A stretch of 64,000 bases of DNA from Thalia democratica (lineage: Eukaryota). Positions 1-62,400 of the stretch are shown here, in pieces. The notes beneath the pieces are model-generated. The model made no database searches, had not been told where the DNA came from, and saw nothing but the letters and a program-made list of their open reading frames with translations. Numbering within the stretch: position 1 is the stretch's first letter; each line of letters begins with the position of its first letter. The stretch spans positions 79,980,001 to 80,044,000 of the forward strand of contig OZ241826.1 in assembly GCA_965202585.1 (NCBI GenBank), given 5' to 3'. A program made the position numbers and the translations under genes.

Positions 1-2691
1 TAACAAAATATTTCAAATATTGGTCGTAAGTGACCAGTAGTTATACAATAAGATATACAAGACACACAATTTCGATAGCTTTTTCTTTCACTATTTCTAA
101 ATTGTTAGTTATGATGTACGCGAATAACTAAACAGTAACAGTCCCTTTTTTTACTAATGAGTTACTAACTATTACATAATTTAATTAATGATATAAAAGC
201 TGTTTTAGTTTTTTGATATTTTATTAACGTTAAAGTTAAATATAGTAAGTAAAAATACATATTTTCAGCGGAAAAACTTAAGTTATACTCTAAGTAATTA
301 TTAAAGCATAAGTTTTGGAAAAAAAAAGATTGTAAAAGTTAATTTAAAAAGTATGAATTTTAAACTAATATTTTTAAAATGTGTTTAAACTTTGTGTATA
401 CAAGAAAATATTAAATGTACAGAATATAAAAAAAACTTGTATAGTTTATATTCTTAGCTTAATTAAACTTTATAGTTTCTTAGTAGGATTTTGATGAAAA
501 CACTTTTTAACTCATATACATATTTTTAAGAATAATCTAAGAAAATGAATTCAAGGTGATCAAACCAAATAATAAATTTATTAAAACTTAAAAACTAGAC
601 TACATTTAGTAGCAAAAACTTGCTGTATTAAATTTCAAGTATATAACAATCTCAATAAATAAAAAAAAAACAGCTAAAAAAAATTGATTTATTTATAAAT
701 TGTTCAGTTTCTAAATATTTTAGTTTGGAGGATTAATCTAATTGCCACTGAGGCCTTGAATACTAAAGCCAGAATGAAAATTGCTTGGATAAATTTATTG
801 AGCATCATTTAATGTTCTGAATCTCCAACCGTTAAGGCCATCTTTTTTTGTCTGATCGTCACTGAATTGTTCTATAAAAACTAAGTTTCACGGCAACCGA
901 TACCAGTCACTGAAATAACCGACGACGATCACGACCAATCACGTTCAATCAAGACCACGATTTACGACAGTGGTGGGGATCACCGCGCCACGAAAAACAG
1001 CGCAGTCGTCATTGATAATCAATTTTCTGCTGACGGACATTACCGCAAAGTGAAAACGCGAAAATACAACCTGCCAGTAGCAACTGCGGTGTAAACAATG
1101 AAAGACGGTTTAATACAAAATAAACAGAAGAAACATAAATTCACTTAAGTCTAACAGGTGAAAGCCTGCGAGGTCGGCGACGTTTCGAGCTATGTGTTCG
1201 GAAATAAAAGTGAAGCTTTTCGTCTGTATTTCATTTTTTTTTTCCATTAGGAATTCTTTTTGTTTAAGTTTTTTGCTTCATGTAAAAATAGGTTTTTAAA
1301 TAATTTTGTTGCTGCTTTATCAAAAATAAAATATTTTAAAAGTGACTTAATAGCACTTAATTTGTTTTCATTTAGTTTTGATTTTTACCTTTTAGATGTG
1401 ATGAAAGGTGAAACAAAAAGAAAACTTGTAAGCAATGTATCTTAATTCGGCGACAAGAAGCAAATCTAAACTTTTATAAGACGTGTGTATTGAAGGTTAC
1501 TAGCGTGCGCGAAATACGCCTAAGGGCTTCTTATGGCGATCATGCCAAAAGTAAACAGCCGCTGCCAACAAAAATCCGCTGATAATTCGCTGCCTTTCTA
1601 ATTAACAGCATAAGGAGCTTTTGCTTAGAAGAAAAGCTGAAGTGAGTTCAAAACAAAGTCGATGTCCATCATTCACATACAACTTGCCCTCACCTAATTT
1701 CGCTGCTTTTTATCTCGCTGAGATTATCCCCTTCGTTTCGTTCACTCGCAAGCTGCTGCCTCTTGTCACAAACTAGGAAAGAAAATTCGAAATTTCATTG
1801 TTGTGAAGTCGCTTTGAAAAAGAGGAAATGAAGTTCGTCGTGGAAAATTACTGGTTGTTTTATCGTTGATTTTTTTTAATCACTTAGAAAGTTCATTCGC
1901 TTGTCAGCTCTTATTAAATACAATATTTCTGACGTATTCTTTTAAGTTTTTTTTTCTAGTCTTTTCTTGACTTGATATTACCAAATTATATTAACTTTGA
2001 CTTTACTTTTGGAGCAACAAATTTTGATGTAGTTTGTAGTTATTTTATATAGTTTAAATCAATGATAAATTTAAAATCTCTATTACTTCTTAAAAGCTGT
2101 TAAAGCTCACTTGTTACTCTACAAGCTTTAAATAGCCGAAATGGCTTTTGTATAAATTTGTGTTTTTATATTAAGTTTTATAACTATTTAAATAATTGCT
2201 TGCTTTTGTTAAATAATATAAGTGTCAAATTGGAGTCTAAATTTGTTTAATCAAGAATATGAAGATTAAAGGTTTTCTGCCAACACATTTTAGTGTTGCT
2301 AGCTAGTGATTGTCAGTTTTAATGTATAGAATTTGTGCTCTGATTATTAAAACAACTATGAACACTTGTTAGTACTTGTGCTTGACTATGTTAAGTAATT
2401 CTTAAATTAAACTTTTAAAGTCCTGAACTCCCTTTTCTTTAAACACTAAGTTACTGTCTATATATTAGTTCGTAATGTATAAAGTTCATCGTGGAAAATT
2501 GCTGGTTTTTTTATTGTTGAGTTGAATTTGGGCAGCTCGACAGATTGCCGCCTTTTGCTCGACGATATTCAAATATGATCTATTTTTAAAATTCAATCGC
2601 TTGTCAGAAACGGTTTACCATGCTTTTATATGTCATGTGAAATCATGATAAACCGTTTGTAGATTGACGACTGCAAGTTTTTTTCTGTTGT

Positions 2692-2734
2692 GACTGACTG
2701 ATGAGTCCTATTAAGGACTAAACTGGCCTCAGTC
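2692..2734 (+). ncRNA. Degenerate hammerhead-like motif (probably inactive)
   Basis: GACTGA/TCAGTC stem I, CTGATGA core, GTCC/GGAC stem II; but TAAA replaces GAAA and GCC replaces GUC. Confidence 0.4.
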
Positions 2735-6105: not shown

Positions 6106-7063
6106 GTTATACACATAAACGTTTTTTTTTTTCACGCAGAAGGTTTTAATGGTTGAGCGAATTATAGGGAAGGTCAATTAGAATAACAAATTAATTGTCA
6201 GTTTTTGTCTTTCTACCTGCATGACAGCTAAGCTTCGAGATAAGCAGTTTGCGGCAATTTCGATCTTTTTTTTAGATAGACTCGATGCCAGCCAAGCACA
6301 AATAGTAAAATTTACGAAATTATTTACATGCGATCAAAAACTGCAGGCTAAAAACTAAAAAAAAATCTTCAAAACATTTTTTAAGCACTTCTTTTTTTGG
6401 ATTTGTTGCTATTAAACTTCACATAAATCTTTCGCAGCAACTTTCGGAAAAAATGGCTTTCGATCGCTCTTTTAATCTGATGTTGTGGAGATTTATAACC
6501 AAGTTTTTACCTTAAAAAAATTGACGCGTTCTCATGTCAACGAGATTATGTCTCGCCCGTTTTGTTTATCAGGGTTGCAGTATCAGGGTTGATAAACAAT
6601 AAGGAAGAAATTCGGAATATGACTTAGACGAAATAGACGAATGTTTTAGATCGTATGCAGGTTATTTTGAAAGAATATATGTATACGTAAATAAATTTCT
6701 AACTAATACAAGAAATTAAAAGCATATATTTTTAATAAATACAAAATTAAACCACAGGTTTTAAGAAAATTTTCATTTGTTTTCTGACGCTGTCATGGAA
6801 AAATAAACATGTGTCTACAAAACTAACTGGTTAAGAAATAAGTTAAAATCACATTTTTAACAAAATCAGCTGCTAATAAAACAAAATTATCTGCAAAATT
6901 CAAAGATTAAAAGAAGGTATTCTACACTTAAGTACGAAGTTTATTTATCTCAAAAAATTCAACTTGTTAAAAAAATCATTTTTCGTTGTCACGGTTATTG
7001 ACCCTCGCTTAGTGGCTTATATTAACGACGGCCACAAAAACATATGTCGATTCAAATTCTGTT

Positions 7064-7135
7064 ACTTTTATGACGTCACACAGGAAGTGAATCTTCGTTG
7101 CGTGGGAACCAGCTGATTATGATTGAGTTGTTTCT
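7064..7135 (-). pseudogene. Fragment homologous to gene A exon 2
   Basis: Reverse complement caactcaatcataatcagctggttcccacgcaacgaagattcacttcctgtgtgacgtca aligns to 19320-19382. Confidence 0.75.
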
Positions 7136-14892: not shown

Positions 14893-16384
14893 TTCGATCA
14901 ACTATACTTTTTGTTTTATAAATAGTATGAACAAGAACTTAAAATGAGTAGTTAAAATATTTTGATACTTTTTTTGCAGTTTTTGTAACTACTTTAAAAA
15001 ACGAGATTTAAAATTTTTAAACTATTTTTCAACATCAATTAAATGAAAACTAAACAACTAATTTGATTTAAAAAAGTGTTTTTATAGATTCAAACAATCA
15101 TTTTTTATTCTGAAATTGTGTTAGATTAAAAACTATACAGTAAACTATTAATAATTGATGTATCCGAAATATAAATACTAGCTCCTCTTATCAATAAAAT
15201 AAATGATTACAAAACAATTGTTCTAATTGTTAAAATAAAATAATACTAAAACAGTTAGACATTGTGTAGCAAACAGTTTTTTGATAATTTTAAAAAGTCT
15301 AATTTTATTAACAACAAAATTAATTGACATCTTTATTTATATACATTTTTTGAACTAATTCTAACTGTTTAATAAACTGAATGTTTATAATACCTTTACT
15401 TAAAAGCCTAAACTAACAGCTTTATAATATTTTGTCATTTATATTCTATAACTTTTTAGCAATGTTCATTGGTAGACAAACGAAGATTGTAAATTAATTA
15501 TGCATCGAATAAGTAGACTGAGTAAATAAAAGTATGCGTAAAAATCAAGGAAGAAAAAGTTGCCTTTTTTAGCGGAGCCGTAAAAATATTTAAAGGGTTG
15601 TTGGACTGCGGGCTCTTCAAAAATCTCAACGAAATTACACAACGCATCCAGAAAACCAGCGAGATTTTATTAGAGACCTTTCACAATCGCCCCCCTTTTT
15701 AAAGCGCTGTGCCGTCGCACAAAGCGATGTTATCTCAGCAGCTAACTGCCTTTTCCCTAGTTTAACGAGTGACAACAGCTTGCGAGTGATAAAAGCGAAA
15801 GGGGATAATCTCGGCGATAAGAAGCAGCGAAATTAAGTGAGGGCAAGTTGTATGTGAATGATGGGCGAAGAATCATTTGAACTCGAGCTTTCTCTTTATG
15901 GCTTCCAAGTGAAGCCAGCTCCTCACATGTCGCTAATAAGAGACGCCGAATTATCAACCGTCTAAAAAACTCGTTTTTCTGGCAGCATAGAAACTTTTCT
16001 TGCGTTTGGAAGTTGGCTTACATAAAGTCATAATCTCTGATGGCCACTTGCATGCTCTCAGAAGCCATACTGATTTCTTTGATAACTTATTTTTTCCTTG
16101 CGCTTTGTAAAAGCTTTTAAAAATGCTCATATAACAAGCAGACTCATATACTTGCTTAACGTTTAATTGTTTTAATTCTAACTAATACATTATTGAATAG
16201 TCTACTTATAAAAACTACTACTTTTCTAACAAACAATAAAGTTTTTGAGTTCTTATTAGCTGGTGGCAAGCATTTCTTTCACTTTCCACACGCGGTATTC
16301 CATCAGAAATCATTTAAAAAACAATCAGCGTGTCGAAATTACTTGGGAAGGCGAACAAATAAAACGAGACAGACAAGTGGTATG

Positions 16385-16900: not shown

Positions 16901-17544
16901 ATGATGAGAGGAGCGCGTTTGTCTAAAGTCTAAAGAGCTATAATTTTCCAAAAAAATATTTTTAAAAGAGGTTAGATGTGATTAGATATTGTTTTTAAAA
17001 GTGTCTGAGGTGTCTTATTCTTTTAATCACTAAATAAGCGTAAGCGTAGTATTCAAAATTTAAAAGTTTTGAATAAGCTTTTGTTTAGGTAGTGTTTAGG
17101 TTAGAGGCGTTAAGAATAATACATTGAAAAGAAATATCTTTTGTTAATAATGTAAGACTTTTTCAAAACATTTTTCACATGGTTTTAAAGCAATTTTTAG
17201 TAAATATCTTACAATTTACTATATGTTATGAACTACTCTAGTTAAATTCAAAACAACAGCTGTTTTATATTATTTTAATTTGTTGGTAAATAATACTTGT
17301 TTGTAAATTAGACATTAGTACTTTTGTTTCTGATAGAAACAGGATAAAACTGAGAATCATAATAAAAATTGTTAAAAAACTAAATTTTAAGCAGATTGCT
17401 TTTTTTGTAAACTATAAAGTTTATGTTTTAGAAATAAGGTTTAGCATGCGAAAAATACTTTTTTAAATTACAAACATTTACTAATCACTTACAGGTATTT
17501 AATAACAAAATAACACTTTTAGTTTAAATAAAAAAATTCTAAAT

Positions 17545-46700: not shown

Positions 46701-48851
46701 GTATGAAAAAATGTCATTTTTTAACTTTAAAAACTATTGTTTGGTATGTTAACAAAGTTTTAATGTTTTATTTAAGAATTTTTATTTAGATTAGTTTTAA
46801 ATAATTTGCTGCTTTGACTTTAGTAGTTTAATTACACAATATAGAAATTTAAGTAAATTTATATTTATTAGAGTAAAAAAATAATTAAAAATCCTCGCCC
46901 AAACAAGCTGCAATAGCGTCAGTTAGCAAACATATTGAGGGCTTCCTACAATGAGGGCAACTAAAAAATTCGAGGGTCAATAATGCAGCGTTATTTGCGA
47001 CAAGGCAGGAAATGGTGATGTCAAGCAAAAAGTGAAGATAATTTTCCTTTCACTTCGACATCAACTACAAAAGGATGTGAAGTTTTTATTATCTGTGGTG
47101 GAAGTTGGTGGTATGTTATTATTGATAAATAAACAATTGGTTTTTTTGTTTAAGTTGGTATTTATGTAACCACGTTTAATAAACTTGTTTATAAATTCTT
47201 TTGTAATTTTCAACGTTAATTTAGCTACTACTTTTGATTTGCGTGCAGTAAAAACAATATTATTTCAAATAAAATTCGCCAGGTGTAATGAAATCAGCCT
47301 CCCGGGAATTTGTAGTATAATTATTTTTTTGAGGAGAAATTTATTCAAAGATGAACCGTCCGCTTATATTAGTATAAATATATATAATAAAAACGTTCTT
47401 TTAAAGCTTAAGAGCTTTACACAAAAACCTTGTAAATAGTTTAATTTAGATTTCTTAGATGAGCCAAGTTATAGTTAAACCGCAAACATATAACAGAAAG
47501 GCCATTAGTAGAATAGAATACAATACCCAAAAGATTGTTGGTTTACTTTGTTTAAAGTTTACTTCGGTTTAAATTTCAAATTACTGCCTTATAAGTATCT
47601 GTGCTCATTAAGCAGTTCGACTTTGTTTAACAATTTTTTAAAATTTGCTTCGTTGTAAGATTATATTTGTATATAAATAGTAATTGATTTCTGCACTACC
47701 GTTGTCATCATTACTTTCTCCATTAAATTTAACTTTAAGGTCTAAGTAGATTGAACTATCTTTAAACTTCACTATAGTAAACAAAATATAAATTTTTATT
47801 TTTTAGAAGGTTTATATAAAGAAAGTTAAACAAATAAATATTTCTTTTGTTTATTTAAAACTTTGAAAATAAAAAAAAGGAATACGAACTATATAAAACT
47901 AGAAAGAAGCAAGATGTAAATTTTTGTAATTAAAATAATATCAATAAAGTTTGCTTTATAACAAAATTTGAAGTGGTTCACCTAATCTTAGATAAAACAG
48001 AAACAAAGGAACACTCTTAAACTATAATTTTATGCAAATTTTACTTTTAAATAATTTATTGTTTTAATAGTGTTTAACTTTTCTTTCTTAAGTTTTAAAG
48101 ACTTTTATTAGACGTTTCTACTGCAAACAACTGTTGTGTATTGCAATTTATTTATTGTATCTAAACACAAAAAACACATAAACTTTTTTATAAATTCTAA
48201 TCATACCCATAATTTTTCTTCAAAAATTAGAAAAACAGTTTTAGTAGTACATAAACTTTTAAGGCCAAAAAAATGTAAAATTTAACTAAAGGCTTTAACA
48301 GAATTTATTCGTAAAAGACTGTTTTGTTTTCAATATTAAAAGCTTATTAAATTAAAATACTAACTTAATTTAATTATCTATTAATATATCATTTTATAAT
48401 TGAAGAAAAAAAAAATTGTATGAAATTATGTTATTGCAAATCTTAGCTAATGTTTGAAAATCAGTCATTAGTACAAAAATAAAGTTTTTTTAGTCTGTTA
48501 AAATAAAACCTCATACTAACTTTAGACTTATAAATTAATTTTTGACACATAGAATAACTAAAAGAAGTCGATCTGGTAATAAAAAAAGTCTATAAACTTT
48601 TGTATTTTTTTACAAACATGCTTTTACTCAGAAAAAATAGAACAAAGAGCACACAAGGTAACTGCTTTTAAAACAACAGAAAAAGGACTTTCAGTCAAAA
48701 ATATTCTTCTGCTAATTTGAGATGTGACAAAAAGTTACTGTAAAGTGTTTTTTTTAAACCTCAAAAAAAAGGTAAACTTTAGAAGCGCCGTGTGAGAAAA
48801 TAGAGACGTTATATTAAAATTTGGACACTAATCAAGTTTCATTGCTGGGTT

Positions 48852-50358
48852 TTACCCTGAATTGTTAAATGGTGAGGAAGGTGAATGTTGAGATTCGAGG
48901 ATGAAGAAGTACGACCCCAAGTGACGGTGAACGGAGGAAACGAGGGTGTGAGCGTGACCCAGTTTCATTTGCAACATGCCCAAGCAAGATTCTTCGGTAA
49001 CTAACGGGAGTGAATAGCCATTGATGCCATTGTCAAGGAAGATCTGTTGTTATGGATACAATTGCATAACTTTGTTTCGGGTTGTAAAACAAACAACAGC
49101 TTTAAACTTTTAATTTCAACAAGATTAAAGTCTTTTTACTTTTAAAGTTTTAATTTTAAGTAAAAACCTTTTTGAATACGTTAAAATTTAATTTTACATA
49201 CTGTTAAGAAGTTTTAAAGCAAAATGGTGGATTTAAAAAAAATGTTTTCAACTTACTTGTTTATATTGCCCCAAATCAATTTCGTCTAAATACTGACCAA
49301 CTCTTTCACAACTCCATTTGCTCATTTCATCGGATTTTTTCAATATTGTTCCTATAATAACTTTGTCAGCAGACATGAAGGATGTCCTGTTGTTAGTTTC
49401 ACCCAACAATGAAGCGTTTTTTGTTGAAGTTTGAGACACGGGTTCAGTTTTATGCATTGTTTTATCGGTTTGAAGGTTACAGTTCTTAAAAGAAGCGCCT
49501 TCTAAAGTGGAATTTCTGTATAACAAAACAATTTTAGTTCATTTAAAAATATAAAAAATATATCTAACGTACTATAAACTTACAAGTCAAAGAGTGAACA
49601 AGAAATTCTTGGTTTTTTTGTCTCTTCTTTAAGTTTTCTGAAAATAAAAATTGTAGAGTTTTGTATCACAAAAACAATTTTTTTACACATTACTGCAGAA
49701 GAAAACTTTTTTTTACCTCATCAGCTTTACAAACCTAAGATTTTATAACATTTTTTAACTAAGTGATACGCTTTATGCATTTTTATTTTATTAAACTATA
49801 TCTTTAATAATATTTAAGTATAAACCTAACTTAATTGTACAAAAAATACTTACATAGGAACGCTACTTGGTCTTATTACGTTCTTCTGGATTGATTTTTT
49901 AACTACACCATCATTAATCTCGCTTGATTTTCTAGAAAAATGTAAAAAATTAAACCTGAAAATCATTACGTTGTATGCTTTAAGAGCTATCAAGTTAACT
50001 TTAAAAGATAAATTTGAGTATATTTTTTCAATGTTTATAAAAGCTAAGTATTTTTTAATTATAATCAATTTTTGCAGCTTTTTAAGTTTATTATCTTAAA
50101 AAAAAGATTAAATTAAGCTGAAAATAAAGTTTTTATAGCTACAAAACTGCTTACTTTTCTGAAATGTCAGCATGGTCTTTAACATCATTTGAGTTATTTT
50201 TCAGATTTTGTTCAAAGGATTTTAGTTCTTCTGATTGGTAAATTTCTTCTTCTACTTTAGGCTTGCCGTTTACTTCAATATTTTCAAGTAAATTTGGTGT
50301 AAATTGTCCGAATGCAGCTGCCATGTTCTTTACAAGATTAGACTGATCTAGCACCAAT
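48852..50358 (-). CDS. Gene B: 3' part (exons 9-13) of a SAND-SAM paralog, 5'-truncated in this copy. Exons: 50358-50155, 49931-49854, 49637-49584, 49515-49257, 49043-48852
   Basis: All five exons are open with canonical splice sites. Lengths 204/78/54/259 nt equal gene A exons 9-12. The SAM exon reads IFLDNGINGYSLPLVTEESCLGMLQMKLGHAHTLVSSVHRHLGSYFFILESQHSPSSPFNNSG* with synonymous changes versus A. Homology to A stops at 50428, so exons 1-8 are absent here. Confidence 0.8.
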
Positions 50359-50435
50359 CTGTAAGTAAGAAGTTAATCGAAGAAAACATTTTAAGTATGA
50401 AAAAATACTTGATGGTTAAACAAAGCATATATATA

Positions 50436-53400
50436 TAAATGACATTTTCGCCCTACTTAACTAGCCATGAAAGATACTTCCGTGGAATGAAATTGGTGTT
50501 AGTTTTAAATTTTAGAAATATAAAGCTTAAATTTTGCACTTAGCAACTTACAGACTTAAACTAAAATCATGTTGACGTTTCACCAGCTTAAGTATCGGTA
50601 TAATCGACCTTTAAAAGTATGTTTAACCTACGAAACTTGTTGCATTTTGTTCAAAGCCTTGCTACCATATGTATGGAAGCTGTAAATTAAATTAAAGCTT
50701 ACGTTATCTCGTAATAATATTATCTACTTGTGTTATTATATAAGATATGTTTCATATTAGCAAAATAACTGTCAACATTGACAACTTCCAGTGTTCTTAT
50801 GGATTACGAATGCTTGCAGATAAAAATTGTGCCTCTTTTGACCTCATTATAATGAGTGTTTGATGCCAAATACAAACACACAAGACAGAAAAAAGCAAAT
50901 TTTTTATGAAATTTTATATTGTTTTAGTACTTTGCTAAGACACGACAGGTATTTTTGGTAATACACTAAATGCACGTTTTATGTTATATATCGGCTTTAA
51001 GGTAAACAAAAATATTTAAAAAAAACAGATAAATTTGTTTCGATTTTTTTACTTTTAAGCTATTGACTAGTTATTTTTTGTTTAATTTTTGTGTCTTCGT
51101 AAGCTTAACATAGTTGATAAAGACTGTTTGTCTATATTGGATTATTTGGGCAATTCAATTGGCTCTTCAGGTTGTATTTTATTGAACTAAACTATTTGTA
51201 AAAGCGCTTCTTTACTTGTTTGCTGAATAAAGCTTGTTACAAATGATGTTGGATTAAAGCAAAAAACACTACCTTCAAACAACCTTTAAATTTTCATATG
51301 CTTCTACGAAGCAATTGTCGGTACACGTTTACTTCTCGTTGTAATTTATCAACTCTGTAAAATTAAAAGCCGAGCAATTCTGTCTCTTGGGTGAAATGCG
51401 TAAAATTTTTAAACACGCCTTTCAAAGTTAAAAGCTAATTGCTAAGAATTTTTTTTTTGTAATAAGCTTATAAGAATAACTGGCAGCAATTAGCCTTTGT
51501 CAGCTGTTTTTAATCGTATTCAGTTGCAAATGAGTTTAAAATAAGATTAATCGAAGAAATAATCCAAATAATCTAATTAAACTTTTCAGCTTAACGACGA
51601 TGGCATCCGCGGCAAGTTTCGCGTCTCGTCGCTTTTTTATTGAGAGCGCAATTTTTAAGTACTGTGAGTTTTGCGCATTTTTATTTTATTTTTTAATGAT
51701 TTAGTTAACATAAATACAACAAAAATAATCAAGTTCAATAAATTTCAGACAGGACTATACTTATACTTAAAATAATAAGTGCTGAAAAGGTAAAAAAATA
51801 AAGTTGTTCTAATATGTATATGTATAAAACAGCTCAAAGTAAATGTTTAGTAAAAACTAACCTCAAATGAATGTTCTTTCGAAAAAATAATATTTTAGCA
51901 AAGTGAAGCCAAGAGTAATGTTAATTAAACCATTTATAAGCATGGCACTGAAAAGCGAATTGAAATTCACATGGGAAATATGCTTGAACTATCTCTTAGA
52001 TAGTTGTAATATTTATTTCACACCAAATTTTAACCATTAAAAAATTAGTCTAAGTTATGACTAAAGGATTAAATTTATTCAAACTCAAACAACTAAATTT
52101 ACAATTTGTTGTTATCGTAAAGCAGTCCTAAAGTTTTAAATGAGACTTTTGTATTAGTTTTCAGTATTATATTGTTTGAGTTATTTATTATCGTCAACAG
52201 TCCTAACGGTTTTAATGCAACCTTTGAAATTTAATTTTTTCAAAGTCATCTGTAGTCAAAAAAACTTGAGATTAGACAATGATGTGTGCGGCTTACTAAC
52301 TGTCGATACTATTTAAAAAAGAGCTTTAAATATGCAATAACTAACCGTAAATGTTTCTTCTTTTTTTTTTCATTAAGCATTACGGATTTTTCTTGTAGTC
52401 ATTAATAACTCGTAAAAGGAGTAGGCTTTTATCTATATATTGTTGCTTTGTTTCGTTTGTGGCGAGAATTCTTTTGAGATTCTGCGCTGATTTTGAGTCA
52501 AGTGATTTGATTCTAATGAGCTTGCTTTTGTCAAACTTCTACGAAAAGAACATTAGTATAAAATAAGTTGTTGTGTTTTGTGAAATGCAAACTTTTCAAC
52601 TTAATCTTAACAAAACACGTGTTTGTTTCAAAACTAAGTGACTTTAACTTTACCAACAAACGGTTTTAAACCATTAATAAAATATAAAAAATGTAACATT
52701 AGATCTCTAGTTTGTTACTTTTAAATTGATAAAAGGGAAATACTGAAACTCATAAAAGAATAAAATATCTTAACTTTAAGAAAACCATAAATAAGTCTTA
52801 AAACACTGTTATACAATGTAGTACAATACAAAATATATTAGAAAAATTTGCTTCTTAAAGGTTGTAGGCAGAACTCGCACTGTTATAAAATAAATTTAAT
52901 ATTTGTGTTTATAAAAAGTAAACTAACATATTTTACTGAATCCCTTAATAAAGTAATATTTACAATACATACTTAGTAATTTTGTATCGAAATTAATTCT
53001 TATTAGTTTAATTCAAAGTTGTATGAATTTTAAATGTTGTGAAATTTTGTATAAGATTGTTTCACAAAAAGTTGAATACATTACAATGGTTGTTAAAACA
53101 CATTAGCTAGATGCTTTATTTGATCGTTAAATGAAGTAGGGATAGATAAATGTTATAATTTTAAGTTCTATATAAATGAATAAGTTGGTTTATATAATAA
53201 ATCAGTATACAAAAATATTATGCACAGCAATTTGGTAGTTAGGGATCAATCTGTTCTATTAATTCACTTTACCATTTGTTTGAGGAAACTATTAATTTAT
53301 CTAAAAAATAAACTAAAGTATGTACAAGCAACTTCTTTAAATCTAGATATAAGACAATTGTGTCGATAAATTATAAAGTATAATCCGCAAATCTGATACG

Positions 53401-56400
53401 TTACAAGCTTTACAAGACAATGTGAATTTACTATATCAGTAACACGTTAGAAGTTTTGAAAACATTATTTCATCGTTTTGCAAAAACATATTATTTAAAT
53501 TATCAGTTACAAGATGCTATTAATTTGTTATTAAGACGTTAAAACCTTAATACGAGCAACGAATTTGTTTAAAACATATTAAAAATTTTAAAGACTACAT
53601 TAAGTTTTAAACCAAAACTTTTATATTATAAAACAGTGTAAAGAAAGAACAAAATTAGGTGAGGACTGTTGATTTTTCTTTTTGATTGATAGGCAAAAAA
53701 TCGACTTTGTTTTGAACTCAAGCCGATTTTACGTTGGTTCTTAAGGCAGCTTCTTTAAAAGATAGGAGCTGCAAACTATCAACGATTTATTCTGGCAAAG
53801 GCGGTTTGTTATACTCACTGTCTTTATGCAATTTTGTATTTTAAAAACACTATAGCCATCTTTTGAAGTTAAGTTTTGTCTTTAATCATTTTTGTTTACT
53901 TATACTTTTGTAGTAGGAACTGCACTAAACTTATATTTGACTAGTTTGTTAAAATAGTATTGTTAAATCTATGTATAAAAAGTTTTAAGCTATTAGAAAT
54001 TATTTTGTTTAAACTATATGCAAAACTTAATACACTATTAAGTCAGATGAAAAATAAATAATCTGAACAAAAATTATAAGGAAAGTTCTTAATAGCAAAA
54101 TATTACTGAAATACAGACGAAAAGCTTCATATTGATTTCCGAACACAAAGCTCGAAACGTTGCCGATCTAGCAGGTTTTCACCTCGCCTTTTTATCTGTT
54201 TCACTTCAATTACAAGGTGTATTGTGCTATAAAACAGTTGAAGCGCTTACTATCATTATATGCCACTTTACTGCAGTGTAAGAATTTACGTTTGTATCAA
54301 AGATCTAATAAATCATTTTTTAAACGATTCAATACGCTATTTTAGTTATTATTTGTTTTAAGGGTTTTAAAGCAGCGTACCGAGCTTATTTTTTTAAACC
54401 TTATTGAAAAAAAAGGTAAACTTTTGCTAGTTGTTGTTTTTTAAAGAATTTTCGAACAAAATGACCGCATAGCAGAAAACAAAAATGTTTACAGAATGGT
54501 AACCGCAACATCGGTTGCTTAGCAACGTGTGATGATGACACATTTATTTCGTCGTTAGTTTGTTGTGATATATCCTTCTATGTCCTCTTTTGGTCGTTGT
54601 AGTGGTTGGTATCGGTTGTTTTGGAACTTCATCATTTACTTGAACTGTAAAAAATAAACTTTAGTTTTTTTGTAGAATTTTTACTATTTTTCAACTACTA
54701 ACTTGGCATATAAGGCTATTTAAACGTTAGAAAATATTTAGAAGTAAAAATAGAGATAAGTTTTTTTGAAACAAATAAAAAATAGCAAATATAAGGTGTT
54801 CAAAACTTATTTATAAGATATCTTTTTAATGTGACGATACTTTAATAGGTGAAATTTGAAAATAATACAACTTTTTTAAATAAAAAAATTATAAACTTTA
54901 AAATATACTGTATGACTGATACTCTTGTTGACAATATCTAGTACTTATTTTATTGCTTACTACGAAACTACAGAAAGCTTTACAACCTTACTTGTCACGC
55001 GGGAGATATGTCGTTTTTCGCTTTTTATGGGGATTAACCTTATTAAATAATTATTTGACCGGAAAGGCACTGCTTAGCAATTGTTCCTACGCAGTAATTC
55101 GTCAACGCTGTTTTAATTGCGTTGTACTTAATGAAATTAATTAGTTATCCTGTTTAGTTGCATCAATAGATAAACTCAATCGGTTAATTTATACGCAATG
55201 TGTCTTCTTTAAAAACAAAGTATAAAAAAGTGTTTTGCTGGAGATAAAACTTAGCAAAAAAAAAAAGATCGAAAACTGATTTTTAAATAAAAAGAAAAAA
55301 AAAACTATAATGTTGTGTCTTTAAAAGTTATATCAATTTCACAAAATTGTGTATAAATTGTCAATGTTTGTTTGTCGCTTGCGCGTTTCTTAAGCAATTT
55401 AAGCAACAGCGAAATTAATTTAAGCTTTGCTTTTTTTATATTTTTTTTCGGCATAACCCTTTCACCGTTTCTACGGTTAACGGATTATGTTCTCCAATTA
55501 CATCGTTACTACTTGTAGTTGCTGAAGGTCACCATTGGCTGCGTGTCTAATTTATAGATTGACGAGCTTCCTTTCCGTTCAAGCCTCATTTTAAATCGAA
55601 ACCTGCGAGTGTTTTGCTTTTTCACGAAGATACTTTGTTTTTTAGTTCTATTTATCGAAATATTTGATTTATATTCAAATGTCAGATATTCAATATATGA
55701 GTAGTTTTACTTTAAAAAAAAACATTTTTACTAAACCCGATTTGAAAAGTTTGTTGTCTTTGAACATGTTAATAAAGTTATGTGTTAAAAAAAATAGTTT
55801 TTTATGAATAATTTTTATACCTATTTGATATACACACCTTTCAAATGTTAATTACGACAATATTATTTGCATAATGAATATCATTTTAATAATAAAGATT
55901 ACAATTTTTTGTTTTTGTTGAAAAATTCTAACTAAAAAGTCAATTACTAAGATTATATTTCACATTTTAATTATTTACCTTAAAAAAAAGTTGAAGTATA
56001 CTTTTCAATTTAACTGATCAATTACAATTTAATTGAAAACGATATAAATGCTTGACGATAAAGATAAACAACAAAAATAATAAAATAAAGAAGAAAAAAT
56101 TAAACACTTCAATGGGTCTTGAACAAAACATGAGGTCTGCTTGACGATACAAATAAATTATAAGGCTATTTATTGCAAGTTTTAATTACTTTGTTTATTT
56201 AAGTTGACTTTGCTCAACTATAGAAAAATAAACATCAAAATATCATTAAGTTTAATAGTTTAAACTGTGGAATACTTTAAGCTTCATTCCCATACGTCAA
56301 AAAAATAATAATTAGCGATTCAACTGTGTAACAGCCCGAAACACCTTGTAATTGATGTGTTTAGAAGCAGATAATAAGATGAAAGCCTGCGAGGCCGGCG

Positions 56401-59400
56401 ACGTTTCAAGCTTTGTGTTCGGAAATTAACTTGAAGCTTTTCGACTGTATTCCAGTATTTTTTGCATTAGGATTTTTCTACAGACTTTTTGTTCAGATTA
56501 TTTACTTTCTTTCTGACTTAATAGTGAATTAAAATTTTGCATATAATTTATGCAAAATAATTTTTTGTAGCTTAAAACTTTTTATAATTAGATTTAAAAG
56601 TTTTATTAAAAACAAACTAGTTTAACTATAAGTTTAGTGCAAGTTCCTACTACAAAAATATAAGTAAATAAAAATTACTAAAGACAAGACTAAAAGTTAA
56701 AAGATGGCTATAGTGTTATTAAAACGCAAAATCCCTAAAAGACAGTGAGTATAACAAACCACCTTTGCCAGAAAAAACCGATGATAATTTGCAGCTTCTT
56801 TCTTTTTATGAACAACGCAAAAACGGCTCTAGTTCAAAACAAAGTCAATTTTTTGCCCATCAATCAAAAAAAAAAGACTCTACAGTCCTCACCTAATTTT
56901 GTTGCTTCTTTACACTGTTTTTTTATTAAAGAAAATTTTGGTTTAAAACTCAATGTAGTCCATAAAATTTTCAATATGTTTCAAACAAATTTGCTGCTAT
57001 TAGGGTTTTAATGTCTTAATAATTAATTAATAGCATCTTTTAATCGATAATTTAAGTAACATAATTTTGCAAAACGAAGAAATTATGTTTTTAAAACTTC
57101 TAATGCGTTACTGATATAGTAAGTTCACATCGTCTTGCAAAGTTTGTAACGTATCAGATTAGCGCTTTATAATTAATATTTTTTTAGTCGATTGTCTTAT
57201 ATATAGATTAAAAACAGTTGCTTGTACTTTAGGTTATTTTTTAGATAAATTGTTTGCTTATTAAAACAAATGGTAATTTGGTTAAATGGAACAGATGGGT
57301 CCCTATTTATCAAATGGCTGTGCACATACTATTTTTGTAGACTGATTTATTATTTAAATTAACTTATCTATTTATATGGAACTTAAAATTATAACACTTA
57401 TTTATCCCTATTTCTTTAAACTATTAAATATAGCATCTAGCTAATCTGTTTTAACAATATTTGTTTTACTTATCAAAATTGTCTGACCACAATTTAACTA
57501 GTTTACAGTATTCAACAATTTGTAGAACAATTTTATACACAGTTTCACAAAATTTTTAATTCATACAGCTTCGAATTAAACTGATAATAATTAATTTCTC
57601 AAGTACTAAGTATTGTAAATACTACTTCATTAAGAGAGTCGGTAAAATATTTAATTTACTTTTTATAAACAAATTTATTAGAATTAATTTATAACGGTGC
57701 GAGTTCTGCCTACAACCGTTAAGAAGCAAACTTTTCTAACATACTTTGTGCTATAATACATTGTACAACGATGTTCCAAGTCTTATTTGTGTTTTTTTGT
57801 AAAGTTAATTATTTTTTTTGAGTTTCAGCATTTCTCATAAACTAATCAACAACTAATAATATTAGTGATCTCATTTACATTCTTATTTATTTTTTATTAA
57901 TTAAATAATAAAACAAAAATTAAACTGTTTGTTTCTAAAGTTAAAGTAACTTAGTTTTGAAACAAACACGTGGTTTGTTAAGATAAAAAATAGCTAAATT
58001 GTTGATTTTAAAGTTTCTAACTACTAAGTTTATACTTATAGTCAGTACATAAAAACAGTATAAAAAACTTTTAAATTTTAGGACAATTTAAAACAAATAA
58101 ATATCTTTTAAAATAACAACTTTAAAAGATCATAAAATAAAATTTCGTAAAATTATATGCATAAAAACTTTTTATCTTTATCTGTAAAAAGTTTGCATTT
58201 TACAAAACACAACAACTTATTTTATACTAACGTTCGTTTCGTAACAGTTTGGCAAAATCAAGCTCATTAGAGTCAAATCTCTTAACTCGAAATCGGCGCA
58301 GAATCGCAAAAGAATTCTGGCCGCAAACGAAACAAAGCAACACAAATATATAAAAGCCTTCTCCTTTTTACGAGTTATTAATGACAAACTAGCAAAAATT
58401 GTAATGTCTAAGGTAAAAAAAAGAAAAACTTACATTCAGCTAGTTAACGCATATTTAAAGCTCTTTTTTAGAATAGTATCGACAGTTAGTAAGCCGCACA
58501 CACCATTGCACGATCTCAAATTTCTTTTACTACAGATGACTTAAATATAAATCAATTCTAAAGGTTGTTTTAAAAGCACTAAGACTGTTGTCAATAATAA
58601 TTAGAAATTTAAACATTAAAATTAACTAAATCATTAGAACAAAGATAAATAGATAGAAAGGCGCAAAACTCACAGTATATAAAAGTTGCGCTTTTCGTAA
58701 AAAAAACGTCAAGACGCCAAATATGCCGCGTTTGTTCCGCCATCGTTATTAAGCTGAAAAGTTTAATTAGATTATTTGAATTATTTCTTCGAATAAACTT
58801 CTTTTTAAATCTTTCGCAGCTGAATACGATTGAGAACAGCTGACAAAGTCTAAATGCTGCCAGTAATTCTCACAAGCTTTTTACATAAAAAAAAAGTTAG
58901 CAATTAGATTTTAACTTTGAAAGATGTGTTTGAAAATTTTACGCATTTCATTAAAAAGAAAGAATTACTCGGCTTTTAATTTTACAGTGTTGATAAACTA
59001 TTACGACAAGTAAACGTGTATCGACAATTGCCTCGTAGAAACATATGAAAATTTTAAGGATTTCCAGAAACTGAAATTAAATATTTTTGAAAGTACATGA
59101 CTGTCTTAGAACTTGGCCTTTCTTTCTTTTTTTGCTTTAATCCAACATCATCAGAAAGAAGCTTTAATTGGCAAACAAGTAAAGAAGCGCTATTACAAAT
59201 AATTTAGTTCAATAAATACAGTTTTAAAAACAATGGAATTGCCAAAATAATTCAATATAGACATACAGTCTTGATCAACTATGTTAAGCTTTAGCAGACA
59301 CAAAAGTTAAATAAAAAAGAATAATTCAACAGCTTAGAAAAAAAAAATTGAAACAAATATCTCTGTTTTGCTTTTTTTTAAATATCTTTGTTTGCCTTAA

Positions 59401-62400
59401 AGCCGACGTACAAAACAAACGAGCATTTAGTATACTATCAAAAGTAACTGACGTTATTTTAGCAAAGTAGTAAAACAATCTAAAAATTTATAAACAATTT
59501 GCTACTCTCTATCCTGTGTGTTGGTATTTGGCATTAAATACGCATAATAATAAGTCAAAAAAGGCATAATTTTTAACTGGAATCATTCGTAATCCATAAG
59601 CACACGTGAAGTTGTCAATGTTTTCAGTTATTTTGTTTACATGAAACGTATCACATAGATAAACATAAGATAATATTATTACGAGATAACGTACGCTTTG
59701 ATTTAATAAACAGCTTCCATACATATGGTAGCAAGGTTTTGAACAAAATGAAACAAATTTTGTAGGTTAAACATACTTTTTAAGGGCGACCACACCGATA
59801 CTTAAGCTAATGAAACGCCAACATGTTTTAAGTTTAAGTCTGTAAGTTATCTAATACAAAATGTAAGCTTCACATTTATAAAATTTGAAACTAACAACAA
59901 TTTCATTCTACGGAAATATCTTTCGTAGCTACTTAAATAGGGCGAAGGTGTCATTTAATCACCCTTTTTTTCAGATGCTGTTAAGATTTGTAAGCAAGTT
60001 TGAACCGTAAACACGGTGACATGTTACCCTGGCAACGAAATTCTTTGTCGCCCGTTTTATTCGATCAGAGTGGCAGTTTGAAGGGTTGATAAGCAAAGAG
60101 ATAGAAACATTTTTCACGCAATACTTTAAGCAGTATGTTTTGTATAAATTACTTTATGATTGCTACTGTGCATGAAATAATTAACTTAAAAAAAGTATTT
60201 TCGACTTCTGAATGAATTTGTTTTGAGTTAATGTCAGCAACAATATAACTTTTGTTTTTTGTATTTTTTAACTTTAAAAAATAATTATAAAAACTACAAT
60301 TTAGTTTTGTTTAATTCATACTATGGTTCCATCTCTAGTACTTTTCAATGTTTTTAACAAATGCGGCAGAAATGGTCATCATCAATTATTAAAAATTTAT
60401 TATTTTAACTTAATTAAATTTTATTTATAGTAAGCAAAACTTAAGATTTATATACAATTTTCAAAAATATTTTATGACTATTTATTTTTCAATTGTAAAC
60501 TGTTAAATAAAGTATTGATGCAAATTAAAGCAATAATTTAGACCAAAAACATGTAAAACTAGAACAATTGGTGTTATAACCTCCGCTCAGTTACTACTGG
60601 TAACAATAGGGGATTAGTGACGAGCGACAACGGAAGTTGTTTTTAGGGGTGATGACATACGTTGCTATGACGTCATACCGGAAGTGAGTTGCGTTGAAAC
60701 CAGATGATGATTGAGTTGCTACGACAATAAATAGTCTAACTTGAAATTTCGTGAAAAAAAAAAATTTATGTGAAAAAACTACTAGATTAAAAAACATATT
60801 TTTATTTTATTTATTATACTTTAATAATTGCATTCTAAAGCTAAATCTTAATGTAATAGTTCAAAGCTTTATTATAAAATCAATGGTAGAGTAAAAATAA
60901 AAAACTAAACTGCAAAAGTGAAAACCCTACTCAAAAAAAATTAAATATTAATGTTTTTACCTAAAAAGTTGTAAAATTTTAAGCAATAATTTTTAGTTTA
61001 AGAAAAAAAGCTTGCTTTGAAACCATGTACAAAAGTATGTTTAAATTTTCAGTTCGTTTAAAAACAATAAAAACAATTTTAAGAAAACCCGCGAGAGTAA
61101 TAAGTTAAGAATTAGGCTATTCAACTGTTTAATTGTTCTTTAATTGTTGAAAAAAAAAGGTTATTTGATCAAAAGGCCAAAAACGTTTGATTGAAAGGTC
61201 AAAAAAGTCGGTAAAAAACTGTTTAACATATTTACACTTATACGAGCTTAAATCTTAGCTACAAGTCGTATTACACAATTACAATACCGCTGCTGATTAA
61301 TTTCTGTCGCCATGGTTACGCGCTAAAGACAAACTAATCTCTAATAAAATTAAGCCGATAAGCGATGATGACCTTTGCGGCAACCAAGGTGGCATGGCAA
61401 CAAGGTTGTCAAGCATTTTCGTAGAAGTTAATTGGTTGAATTACCGGAAAACTACCGACGTCTACGAGCGGTGACTGATGTCTGAAAACTACCGCTAAAT
61501 TGTAGGAGGGGCCAAAACGAATGTAAAAATATGACCAAATTTTCAATTTTTAATTTTGAAAAAACTTATTAAATTTTTATATTAACGTTTAAAAACTGTG
61601 AAAACCTCTTAACATTTGTTTTAAAAATCACTTTGGCAAAATAAAAACATATTCATTAACGCACTTAAGACTTTGTCAAATAGTAAGCAAATAGTTTGCA
61701 ATTGCTGTTAATTAGAATCAACAGTGCTAAATATATTTTACTTATATTACATTTGTATGAAATATTTTGGAATCTCCTTAGATATTAAAACTTTTTAATA
61801 AGAGACTAGAGAAATTAAAAATAATTATGTTCTAGTTTTTGGTAGACCTTTTAAACAGAACTACACGTAAAACTATGCTTACAAGTATTTTTATAATGAT
61901 TGCAACAAATAAAAAGTAATTTACTGTGAAAGATAAAAAGCTTTTTAAATTTAAAAAACTTCATAAAATTGCAGTAAATCAAAATAAAAAACCTGAGATT
62001 AATCAAACTTTGTTATACAAAAAGTTTTTTTTTTGTGAATTTTGCACAAAAACAAATTCAAACTATAAAACGACCGACTTAAAACACCCCAAAAAAACAA
62101 ATTAAAACTTAGAAGTTATAAATTATTGAAGTAATAATAAATTACCATTTTGGTTTAAGACTGTTTTTACCGTGGGTTTGTAAAAAGAAAAGCCGAAAAT
62201 TAGCGATGTGTCAACATTGTAAGTGAAAAACCACAAAAAAGCTGACTTGCCTCGAAAGCTGTTTATTAATCAGCAAACAGCTCTTTAGCAGAGAAATTAG
62301 TTTGTAATGCGTAGTGGCATAAAACGACTGTAGTGAAAATTTATGTTTGATATTTTTCAGATATAAAAGCGAGCTTGAATCATTCAACGTCGTTAAAAGA

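What the first reader, a model, noticed from the sequence alone, without database searches (positions are those of the whole stretch)
885..61319. SAND-SAM gene family locus saturated with RFX X-boxes, including inside coding exons and in dead copies
Seen: full 13-15 bp X-box-like palindromes at 885, 16808, 16884, 18560, 18619, 21280, 24494 (inside coding exon 5), 27494, 32114, 37552, 43052, 44336 and 49046, plus duplicates at 54514, 60023 and 61306. Several belong to independent positions in the gene, and pseudogenised copies keep them while flanks decay. Established: GTNRCC-N0-3-RGYAAC is the RFX site controlling ciliogenesis, sensory-neuron and spermatid programs. Inference: this is an RFX-driven SAND-SAM regulator whose duplicated fragments persist as an enhancer array (an RFX shadow-enhancer or decoy field) rather than as genes.
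Basis: partly seen in the sequence, partly recalled or inferred. Interest (0 to 1): 0.78.

Follow-up and report, generated by a model that had tools for sequence, protein, structure and literature searches.

The report
X-box-rich amplified SAND-SAM gene cluster
A recently multiplied family of uncharacterised SAND-SAM regulator genes, probably in a tunicate, carries conserved control modules packed with RFX-type X-boxes and CRE sites. The repeated motifs in the right half of the window are by-products of young duplications, not a preserved decoy or enhancer field.

Summary
All 16 listed motifs are at the stated coordinates. X-box-like palindromes are strongly and specifically over-represented:
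- 5 sites with at most 1 mismatch against 0.10 expected, and 16 with at most 2 against 1.95 expected, from local shuffles.
- The X-box half-site ranks first of 90 composition-matched half-sites.
- Motif density is about 30 times the genome average.

The window holds one intact 596-aa SAND-SAM gene (17545-27695, + strand). It belongs to a family of at least 14 copies clustered on this chromosome.

The X-boxes lie in CpG-rich modules conserved among the paralogs: the promoter, intron 1, intron 2, a module 4.3 kb downstream, and exons 1, 2 and 5. These modules also carry CRE palindromes (9 against at most 2 for controls) and CCAAT boxes. The intron-1 module is as conserved as the coding exons.

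RFX-dependent regulation is therefore plausible but untested, because no RNA or binding data were available.

The "dead copies kept as an enhancer or decoy array" reading fails. The repeated sites lie in a 99.2% identical 17-kb tandem duplicate and in the 3' flank of a full convergent paralog. Motifs are no better conserved than their flanks.

Homologous loci in Ciona and Clavelina show no X-box excess. This genome also holds at least 23 RFX DNA-binding-domain loci. Other first readers of this scan noted X-box clusters elsewhere in the same genome.

The parts
16341..16960 (+). Promoter island P1. It is CpG-rich, with two X-boxes (16808-16820 GTTGTCAGGCAAC; 16884-16897 TTTGCCGTGGTAAC) 63 bp apart and a TATA-like GCTATAA at about 16938. 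The family consensus forms are GTTGCCAGGCAAC and GTTGCCGTGGTAAC.
   Evidence: Alignment of 10 paralogs. The first X-box is present in 8 of 10 copies and the second in 10 of 10. CpG observed/expected is 1.55.
17545..17819 (+). Coding exon 1 (ATG at 17545), holding the X-box GTTGCCTGGTAAC at 17679-17691.
   Evidence: Gene model with an intact ORF. The motif is identical in 9 of 10 paralogs.
18341..18660 (+). Intron-1 island I2, the densest X-box module. It holds GTTGCCAAGCGAG (18485), the everted pair TTGGCAACCGTTGCTAA (18536, invariant in 10 of 10 copies), GTTTACATGGTGAC (18560) and GTTGCTATGGAAAC (18619). A fifth family X-box, GTTGCCAAGCAAC, is lost here through an 11-bp deletion near 18472. 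GACGTC sits at 18405.
   Evidence: Alignment. Substitution identity is 0.903 with a gap fraction of 0.008, against 0.77-0.81 and 0.05-0.14 for introns. There are 12 copies in the genome, all in the family cluster. Indels are not multiples of 3, so it is non-coding.
19316..19482 (+). Coding exon 2, with the X-box-like GTTTCCACGCAAC (19344) and the CRE palindrome TGACGTCA (19375).
   Evidence: The CRE is invariant in 10 of 10 paralogs.
20541..21400 (+). Intron-2 island I3. It is CpG-rich, with a CRE at 20958, CCAAT/ATTGG boxes, the X-box GTTGCCAATGGAAAC (21280) and GTTGCTAGAGGTCAC (21311).
   Evidence: It is conserved at 75-93% in all copies, with a substitution identity of 0.852.
21730..24075 (+). 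Exons 3 (21730-21966) and 4 (23849-24075), which encode the SAND domain with the KDWK motif and a His/Cys cluster.
   Evidence: Pfam SAND matches at 6e-4 and 2e-14. The nearest solved structure is the GMEB1 SAND domain at 5.6e-5. Third codon positions are less conserved than first and second positions.
24381..24616 (+). Coding exon 5, carrying two CRE palindromes (24398, 24464), GGCAACCGTTGG (24478) and the X-box GTTGCCAAGCAAC (24494).
   Evidence: Indels among 12 copies are all multiples of 3. The motifs are kept in 8-9 of 10 copies. There is no excess synonymous constraint.
26073..27695 (+). Exons 6-8 of the model (26073-26276, 27031-27289, 27510-27695); the last two encode the SAM domain and the stop codon. 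The listed site at 27494-27507 directly abuts the acceptor AG at 27508-27509.
31900..32220 (+). Downstream island D1, 4.3 kb beyond the stop codon. It holds GACGTC (31971), CCAAT, GTTGCCATGCCAC (32032), a family X-box GTTGCCATGGTAAA that is damaged here by a 3-bp deletion, ATTGG, and GTAACCATGGCGAC (32114). A further CRE lies at 32754 and GTTACCAGTAGTAAC at 32825.
   Evidence: Alignment of 6 copies shows the island is clearly better conserved than its surroundings. It has 8 full copies in the genome, all in the cluster.
26536..34748 (+). Left arm of an inverted repeat (81% identity). It comprises the 3' exons and 3' flank of the + strand gene.
   Evidence: Self-BLAST.
41650..50431 (-). Right arm of the inverted repeat: a truncated 3' fragment (last three exons plus flank) of a minus-strand paralog. 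It carries island D1' at 44301-44500 (sites 44336, 44419) and the X-box 43052.
50436..64000 (.). Second unit of a 16,963-bp tandem duplication (33473-50431 equals 50436-67398 at 99.2%). It runs on into a full minus-strand paralog beyond the window end and holds the duplicate sites 54514, 60023 and 61306.
801..1200 (.). CpG island with GTTTCACGGCAAC (885) and two CCAAT boxes. Parts of it recur near other family copies.
7060..7115 (.). Small composite module: CRE TGACGTCA (7071), an ETS-like CAGGAAGTG, and the X-box-like GTTGCGTGGGAAC (7097).

Best explanation
The window covers part of a young cluster of SAND-SAM transcription-factor genes arranged in tandem and inverted order. The SAND domain is GMEB/DEAF1-like and is joined to a C-terminal SAM domain. 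The family has at least 14 copies, mostly within C1:79.9-80.2 Mb of a probable tunicate genome.

Each gene unit carries family-specific, CpG-rich cis-regulatory modules:
- a promoter with two X-boxes just upstream of a TATA-like box;
- an intron-1 module with about five X-box-type sites in 150 bp;
- an intron-2 module;
- a module 4.3 kb downstream.

X-box and CRE motifs also lie inside coding exons 1, 2 and 5.

The most likely mechanism is that RFX dimers bind these homotypic X-box clusters together with bZIP (CREB/ATF-type) and CCAAT-binding factors, and switch the whole family on in RFX-positive cells. The RFX could be the canonical RFX1-3-type protein encoded on C8, or members of this genome's expanded RFX repertoire.

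What is shown: the gene structure, the duplication history, the motif enrichment, and module-level conservation among the paralogs. What is inferred: RFX and bZIP occupancy, and the cell type.

The many repeated motifs in the right half of the window result from recent segmental duplication and have no independent function.
For: - Motif enrichment is specific to the X-box half-site and survives local-composition controls. Density is about 30 times the genome average in the window and about 100 times in the 5' halves of 11 paralogs.
- The X-boxes recur at the same positions in 8-10 of 10 paralogs, and the family consensus forms are near-ideal.
- Island I2 is conserved like an exon: identity 0.903 and gaps 0.008, against 0.77-0.81 and 0.05-0.14 for introns.
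- The islands are not dispersed repeats. Every genomic copy lies in the family cluster.
- The CRE palindrome is enriched too: 9 against at most 2 for 23 matched palindromes.
- A CRE followed within 5-35 nt by a strict X-box occurs 38 times in the genome, against 0 for the reversed control.
- The genome encodes a canonical RFX DNA-binding domain (E 7e-30 to the human RFX1 DNA-binding domain) and many divergent ones.
- The in-window gene has 8 exons with canonical splice sites and an intact 596-aa ORF.
Against: - There are no expression, transcription-start or binding data. No RNA run was found, and the reads laid on the window were DNA contigs.
- Within the modules the X-boxes are no better conserved than the neighbouring bases. 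Constraint is therefore shown for the modules and not for the motifs.
- Gene conversion among the paralogs could inflate the apparent conservation.
- The window's own copy has degraded versions of four family X-boxes, although its ORF is intact.
- The closest named homologous loci in Ciona and Clavelina show no X-box excess. The feature is therefore lineage-specific and gets no support from orthologs.
Confidence: 0.6

Rival explanations
1. One reading: duplicated, pseudogenised fragments of the gene are kept by selection as an RFX shadow-enhancer array or a decoy (sponge) field rather than as genes.
For: One real truncated 3' fragment exists at 41.6-50.4 kb and keeps island D1' with two X-box-like sites. 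A 96-bp piece of island I3 that includes the site at 21311 is copied to 38540.
Against: The fragment is part of a 99.2% identical 17-kb tandem duplicate and is too young to show retention. The 81% inverted copy belongs to a full paralog. Motif identity equals flank identity, and one X-box (43052 against 33400) has decayed in one copy. The 3' flanks carry few strict X-boxes; the density lies in the 5' halves of intact genes.
Confidence: 0.07
2. The palindromes are not RFX sites. Either another factor binds them (a lineage-specific protein, or the family's own SAND proteins), or they act outside transcription, for example as boundary elements or as gene-conversion or recombination hotspots that helped amplify the cluster.
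For: No binding data exist. The motifs show no motif-level constraint. The cluster is full of inverted and tandem rearrangements. SAND proteins of the GMEB type bind ACGT cores (established knowledge), which could account for the CRE-like sites.
Against: The motif matches the canonical RFX consensus in both half-site sequence and spacing. The perfect 14-mer occurs 24 times in the genome against 0 for its reversed control. RFX genes are present. Known SAND targets (TTCG, ACGT) do not resemble GTTGCC-N-GGCAAC.
Confidence: 0.13
3. The islands are alternative promoters or first exons, or promoters of separate unannotated transcripts. X-box, CRE and CCAAT would then form a general core-promoter grammar for a class of genes in this genome and not a special property of this locus.
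For: The islands are CpG-rich with CRE, CCAAT and TATA-like elements. CRE plus X-box composites occur in other tandem families elsewhere in the genome. Other first readers flagged X-box clusters at Pax, BMP and Ikaros-like loci. Island I2 is followed by a possible splice donor.
Against: Only about 4800 strict strand-hits exist in 802 Mb, so this is not a universal promoter element. No transcript evidence is available. This reading overlaps with the best explanation more than it competes with it.
Confidence: 0.18
4. The enrichment is a by-product of chance, base composition or duplication.
For: Three listed sites are exact duplicates and two pairs are paralogous. Several listed sites are weak, with 3-4 mismatches.
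Against: After removing the duplicate and preserving local composition, 5 sites are observed against 0.10 expected and 16 against 1.95. The X-box half-site ranks first of 90 permuted half-sites. Poisson P is 5e-11 against the genome density.
Confidence: 0.02

Closest known systems
RFX target promoters with X-boxes, including genes with multiple X-boxes (C. elegans DAF-19 targets, PMC3245922; Drosophila, PMC2375033; human, PMC5838959)
   Same: The sites are inverted GTTGCC/GGCAAC half-sites with 1-3 nt spacers. They lie close upstream of a putative core promoter, several sites occur per gene, and an RFX gene is present in the genome.
   Different: The target here is a tandemly amplified transcription-factor family and not a ciliary structural gene. 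The sites also fill introns, a downstream module and three coding exons. There is no ortholog-level conservation, since the Ciona and Clavelina loci lack them. No binding or expression data exist.
Vertebrate MHC class II S-X-X2-Y enhanceosome module (RFX5 complex, CREB and NF-Y; PMC2677874, PMC7866136)
   Same: An X-box, a CRE or half-CRE and a CCAAT/ATTGG box co-occur within about 60-100 bp. One example is island D1, where the family form reads GTTGCCATGGTAAA, then GTCATC, then ATTGG.
   Different: Order and spacing are not fixed between islands. The gap from the half-CRE to ATTGG is 21 nt here, against 16 nt in HLA-DRA as recalled from memory. No S box is evident, CIITA, RFXAP and RFXANK were not examined, and full palindromic X-boxes suggest RFX1-3-type dimers.
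Uncharacterised SAND-SAM proteins of Ciona intestinalis (LOC100176298), Clavelina lepadiformis (LOC143464932), Phallusia mammillata, Strongylocentrotus purpuratus (LOC100893739) and Lingula anatina (LOC106178465)
   Same: They share the architecture of a SAND domain followed by a C-terminal SAM domain and show 58-66% identity over the SAND exon.
   Different: The protein here is shorter (596 aa against 579-1198 aa). The gene is amplified to at least 14 copies, and its locus is loaded with X-box and CRE modules that the Ciona and Clavelina loci lack.
Homotypic clusters of transcription-factor binding sites, and shadow enhancers
   Same: Several separate modules per gene unit each carry multiple copies of the same motif.
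   Different: Redundant enhancer function is not shown. The apparent array in the right half of the window comes from recent duplication.

Membership tests
RFX X-box site | Sequence matches GTNRCC-N0-3-RGYAAC, meaning inverted GTTGCY half-sites. | tested here: met
   There are 7 strict sites in the de-duplicated window and 16 sites within 2 mismatches of GTTGCC-N0-3-GGCAAC. The family consensus forms have 0-1 mismatch.
RFX X-box site | Occurrence above background. | tested here: met
RFX X-box site | Location in the proximal promoter, typically within about 250 bp of the transcription start. | tested here: inconclusive
   The two P1 sites lie 41 and 118 bp upstream of a TATA-like box. The transcription start is unknown, and most sites are intronic, exonic or downstream.
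RFX X-box site | A cognate RFX protein is encoded in the genome. | tested here: met
   PF02257 gives 23 matches over the cut-off. The C8 copy matches the human RFX1 DNA-binding domain at E 7e-30.
RFX X-box site | Physical binding by RFX, and RFX-dependent expression. | not testable with these tools
   No RNA run was found, and no ChIP data are accessible.
RFX X-box site | The site is conserved in orthologous genes of related species. | tested here: not met
   The Ciona (L029) and Clavelina (L030) loci have 0 sites at <=1 mismatch and 4 at <=2, equal to the permuted controls. The Ciona locus lacks the promoter of the SAND part. The sites are conserved only among the paralogs.
Decoy or shadow-enhancer array of dead gene copies | The copies carrying the motifs are pseudogenised fragments. 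| tested here: not met
   The inverted copy belongs to a full paralog. Only one 3' fragment exists, inside a 99.2% identical tandem duplicate.
Decoy or shadow-enhancer array of dead gene copies | Motifs are conserved while their flanks decay. | tested here: not met
   Motif identity matches flank identity. At synonymous sites the values are 0.914 against 0.884, p=0.20.
MHC-II-type S-X-X2-Y module | Fixed order and spacing of X1, X2 (CRE-like) and Y (CCAAT). | tested here: not met
   The distance from CRE to X-box ranges from 7 to 71 nt, and the order varies between islands and between genomic families.
SAND-SAM protein family | A SAND domain with the KDWK motif plus a C-terminal SAM domain in one ORF. 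| tested here: met
   Pfam SAND at 2e-14, with weak SAM_1/SAM_2 hits on the first SAM exon. The spliced ORF of 596 aa is intact. Homologs with the same architecture exist.

The most novel reading that the evidence does not exclude
This tunicate lineage has built a private RFX network. Its RFX repertoire has grown to at least 23 DNA-binding-domain loci, at least 18 of them in tandem arrays, against 4 RFX genes reported for Ciona. It may act through CRE plus X-box modules that have spread over the promoters, introns and even coding exons of tandemly amplified gene families. The SAND-SAM cluster, with about 5 strict X-boxes per gene unit, would be one of the main targets. The result would be a co-amplified pairing of transcription factors and binding sites, possibly driving a germline-specific or ciliated-cell-specific programme.
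Probability: 0.2. Interest if true: 0.7.

Novelty: new member of a known kind. Interest (0 to 1): 0.42.

Why it matters
If RFX really drives this family, it links a conserved but entirely uncharacterised class of animal SAND-SAM regulators to a known transcriptional programme. That gives a concrete way to study them. The locus also offers compact modules for reporter tests of how multiple X-boxes act with CRE sites; the 320-bp intron-1 island is a good example.

The combination of an expanded RFX gene repertoire with X-box-rich amplified families may be a case of lineage-specific rewiring in the sister group of vertebrates.

The negative result matters as well. Repeated motifs inside young segmental duplicates should not be read as selected decoy or shadow-enhancer arrays.

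Tried and rejected
- **Expression evidence.** The look-up of sequencing runs returned no RNA holders. The two runs laid on 16400-22399 were fragmented DNA contigs of the multi-copy family and gave no transcription start or splice information.
- **RNA genes.** An Rfam scan of the whole window found nothing, so the islands are not known RNA genes.
- **Shared island repeat.** The islands do not share a common repeat. BLAST among them found only a 17-mer shared by I2 and D1.
- **Dispersed transposon origin.** Rejected, because all genomic copies of I2, D1 and the element at 43052 lie inside the family cluster.
- **Full-length annotated protein for this species.** None was found. The only close hit was a 141-aa fragment.
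- **Hydra as host.** This was my first guess, from the 27% GC content. I dropped it after earlier follow-up notes and the nearest named homologs pointed to tunicates.
- **Exon at 24791-24994.** It does not fit the reading frame. Splicing exon 5 directly to the exon at 26073 is in frame.
- **Literature.** Searches for the Ciona, sea urchin and Lingula gene identifiers and for X-boxes in ascidians returned nothing specific.

Full report
**Observation**

All sixteen motifs stand at the coordinates given. Their quality varies:
- Five are within one mismatch of GTTGCC-N0-3-GGCAAC: 16808, 21280, 24494, 43052 and its duplicate 60023.
- Five have two mismatches.
- The rest have three or four. Site 27494 directly abuts the acceptor AG of the last intron.

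It also missed 7097, 19344, 32032 and 44419.

The window is 28% GC, so such GC-rich palindromes should be rare. Four controls agree that the excess is real:
- Whole-window dinucleotide shuffles give 0.14 and 2.2 sites at <=1 and <=2 mismatches, against 6 and 20 observed.
- With the 99% duplicate removed and shuffling kept inside 200-bp or 500-bp blocks, to preserve local GC islands, the figures are 0.10 and 1.95 against 5 and 16.
- Among the 90 permutations of the half-site letters, GTTGCC ranks first. The control mean is 0.17 and 2.1, and the next best half-site reaches 8.
- The strict consensus occurs 4835 times (both strands) in the 802-Mb genome, against 1822 for its reversed control. That predicts 0.30 hits for the de-duplicated 50.4 kb, against 9 found. 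Poisson P is 5e-11.

The perfect 14-mer GTTGCCATGGCAAC occurs 24 times in the genome, against 0 for its control.

**What the locus is**

Self-comparison and the sequence just beyond the window end give the following layout.

One gene lies on the + strand. My model has eight coding exons between 17545 and 27695. All have AG/GT splice sites, and the ORF of 596 aa is intact.
- Exons 3-4 encode a SAND domain with KDWK (Pfam 2e-14). The nearest solved structure is the GMEB1 SAND domain.
- The last two exons encode a SAM domain.

The gene's last three exons and 7 kb of 3' flank (26536-34748) are repeated in inverted orientation at 41650-50007 with 81% identity. Region 33473-50431 is repeated in tandem at 50436-67398 with 99.2% identity (period 16,963 bp). 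Beyond 67.0 kb a complete minus-strand paralog continues.

The right half of the window is therefore the 3' flank of a convergent full-length paralog plus one young duplicate of it. Only 41.6-50.4 kb is a truncated gene fragment.

The SAND exon has 14 copies in the genome at 89-98% amino-acid identity. Eleven lie in C1:79.91-80.19 Mb, in both orientations.

The closest named proteins with the same SAND-SAM architecture are uncharacterised proteins of Clavelina, Ciona, Phallusia, sea urchin and Lingula. With earlier follow-up notes, this points to a tunicate host.

**Where the X-boxes sit**

They coincide with CpG-rich islands. I fetched the 5' halves of eleven paralogs and the 3' flanks of ten and aligned them.
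- **Promoter island P1 (16341-16960).** It has two X-boxes 63 bp apart, just upstream of a TATA-like box. The family consensus forms are GTTGCCAGGCAAC and GTTGCCGTGGTAAC.
- **Intron-1 island I2 (18341-18660).** It holds about five X-box-type elements. These include a 17-nt everted pair invariant in all ten copies and GTTGCTATGGCAAC. The window's own copy has lost a fifth, GTTGCCAAGCAAC, through an 11-bp deletion.
- **Intron-2 island I3 (20541-21400).** It carries a CRE, CCAAT boxes and two X-boxes.
- **Downstream island D1 (31900-32220).** It lies 4.3 kb beyond the stop codon. It carries three X-box-type sites, GACGTC and CCAAT/ATTGG, and stands out as a conserved block in six copies.
- **Coding exons 1, 2 and 5.** They also contain X-box-like motifs. 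Exon 5 is truly coding, since all indels among 12 copies are multiples of three.

The islands are not dispersed repeats. Every genomic copy of I2, D1 and the element around 43052 lies in the family cluster.

Strict X-box density is 627 strand-hits per Mb in the 5' halves of the eleven paralogs, against 6.0 per Mb genome-wide. The 3' flanks are sparse, with 4 strand-hits in 100 kb.

**A second motif**

The CRE palindrome TGACGTCA occurs nine times in the de-duplicated window, against at most two for any of 23 composition-matched palindromic 8-mers. It often lies 26-71 bp from an X-box. Examples are 7071/7097, 19375/19344, 24464/24494 and 32754/32825.

Genome-wide, a CRE followed within 5-35 nt by a strict X-box occurs 38 times, against 0 for the control. 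Many of these lie in other tandem arrays, such as ten copies at C2:77.58-77.99 Mb. The grammar of X-box plus CRE (plus CCAAT) is therefore a recurrent module of this genome, as other first readers also noted.

**Constraint**

Island I2 as a whole is conserved like an exon: substitution identity 0.903 and gap fraction 0.008. Introns show 0.77-0.81 and 0.05-0.14; exons show 0.92-0.95. P1 and I3 are intermediate.

Within the modules, however, the X-boxes are no better conserved than their neighbours:
- Column identity for motif against flank is 0.55/0.55, 0.87/0.74, 0.78/0.88 and 0.93/0.93.
- In the 81% inverted pair, three sites are identical, which happens for 12% of all 14-mers. One is at flank level, and the good X-box at 43052 corresponds to a decayed GTTGCGAGTACGAC at 33400.
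- Third codon positions inside exonic motifs are no more conserved than other third positions (0.914 against 0.884, p=0.20).

Constraint is therefore shown at the level of modules and not of individual motifs. Gene conversion among the paralogs cannot be excluded as a contributor.

**Trans factors and orthologs**

The genome has 23 matches to the RFX DNA-binding domain.
- One is a canonical RFX1-3-type domain, with E 7e-30 to the human RFX1 DNA-binding domain.
- One is a second singleton.
- At least 18 are divergent copies in tandem arrays on C1 and C6. They keep the FGK...TRRLG.R signature.

Ciona was reported to have four RFX genes (PMC2873420).

The homologous SAND-SAM loci of Ciona and Clavelina show no X-box excess. 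The Ciona locus lacks the 5' end of the SAND part. The X-box load is thus specific to this lineage.

**Interpretation**

The best-supported reading is a young, amplified family of intact SAND-SAM regulator genes. Its promoter, intronic and downstream modules are homotypic X-box clusters combined with CRE and CCAAT elements. RFX dimers most likely bind them together with bZIP and NF-Y-type factors.
- Shown: the locus structure, the enrichment, and module-level conservation.
- Inferred: RFX binding and the tissue of expression. No RNA run held the stretch, and the laid reads were DNA contigs.

It is not supported. The repeats are either part of a full paralog or 99.2% identical to one, motif retention equals flank retention, and the density lies in the 5' halves of intact genes.

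**Comparison with known systems**

The sites meet the sequence definition of RFX X-boxes, and the arrangement resembles RFX targets with several X-boxes (PMC3245922). The co-occurrence of X-box, CRE and CCAAT recalls the vertebrate MHC class II S-X-X2-Y module. The fixed order and spacing that define that module are not met here.

I file this as a new member of a known kind: an X-box-rich putative RFX target. The more novel possibility, which I could not test, is a lineage-specific co-expansion of RFX genes and X-box and CRE modules in amplified gene families.

Noticed in passing
G000 C1:89.548-89.727 Mb, C1:23.04-23.45 Mb, C6:70.90-71.26 Mb, C8:39750833, C1:51647331: There are 23 matches to the RFX DNA-binding domain. 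Two are singletons (one RFX1-3-type). At least 18 are divergent copies in tandem arrays, five of them spaced about 18.4 kb apart with identical scores. Ciona is reported to have 4 RFX genes, so this may be a lineage-specific RFX expansion.
   Followed up: partly
window 7071, 12845, 13690, 19375, 20958, 24398, 24464, 32754, 43696: The CRE palindrome TGACGTCA is about as over-represented as the X-box: 9 against at most 2 for matched palindromes. It lies inside coding exons 2 and 5. In exon 2 it is invariant in 10 of 10 paralogs and overlaps an in-frame ATG.
   Followed up: partly
G000 C2:77.58-77.99 Mb (10 copies, about 38-kb period); C4:55.47-55.54 Mb (3 copies); C7:9.875/9.899 Mb; C2:57.516/57.529 Mb: Other tandem or inverted multi-copy families carry an identical composite of a CRE and an X-box at short fixed spacing, for example TGACGTCACTGTCCAGTTGCTTGGCAAC. 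I did not identify the genes.
   Followed up: no
window 33473-50431 and 50436-64000 (continuing to 67398 beyond the window): A 16,963-bp tandem duplication at 99.2% identity that cuts a paralog between its exons. It could be a very recent event or an assembly or haplotype artefact.
   Followed up: partly
window 16808, 16884, 18472, 18619, 32057: The window's own gene copy carries degraded versions of five family-consensus X-boxes: point changes, an 11-bp deletion and a 3-bp deletion. Its 596-aa ORF is nevertheless intact.
   Followed up: yes
window exons 17545-17819, 19316-19482, 24381-24616 compared with 21730-21966, 23849-24075: Among the paralogs only the SAND exons show the coding signature, with third positions less conserved than first and second positions (0.84-0.90 against 0.96-0.97). 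In exon 2 the third positions are more conserved than the first and second positions (0.938 against 0.905); exons 1 and 5 keep a weaker third-position gap (0.885 against 0.921, 0.883 against 0.932). This suggests relaxed or diversifying evolution outside the SAND domain.
   Followed up: partly
window 9928-10176 (+), and G000 C1:80121731-80121976 (-): An 82-aa open frame with no Pfam match has a 99% identical second copy 132 kb away in the same cluster. A module of CRE, ETS-like and X-box-like motifs lies 2.8 kb upstream, at 7060-7115. It is possibly another small duplicated gene.
   Followed up: partly
window 12590-14450: A CpG-rich region upstream of the gene consists of diverged tandem modules of about 800 bp (69-72% identity). 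Each carries a CRE palindrome (12845, 13690) but no X-box.
   Followed up: no
window 21311-21406 and 38540-38635 (also 55518-55613): A 96-bp piece of intron-2 island I3, including an X-box-like site and a CCAAT box, is copied at 92.7% identity into the intergenic spacer between the convergent genes.
   Followed up: partly
whole genome; earlier notes: Earlier follow-up notes on this same genome disagree on the host: some say Hydra, others say a marine tunicate. The nearest named SAND-SAM homologs are tunicate proteins. CpG is not depleted outside the islands (observed/expected 1.03).
   Followed up: partly
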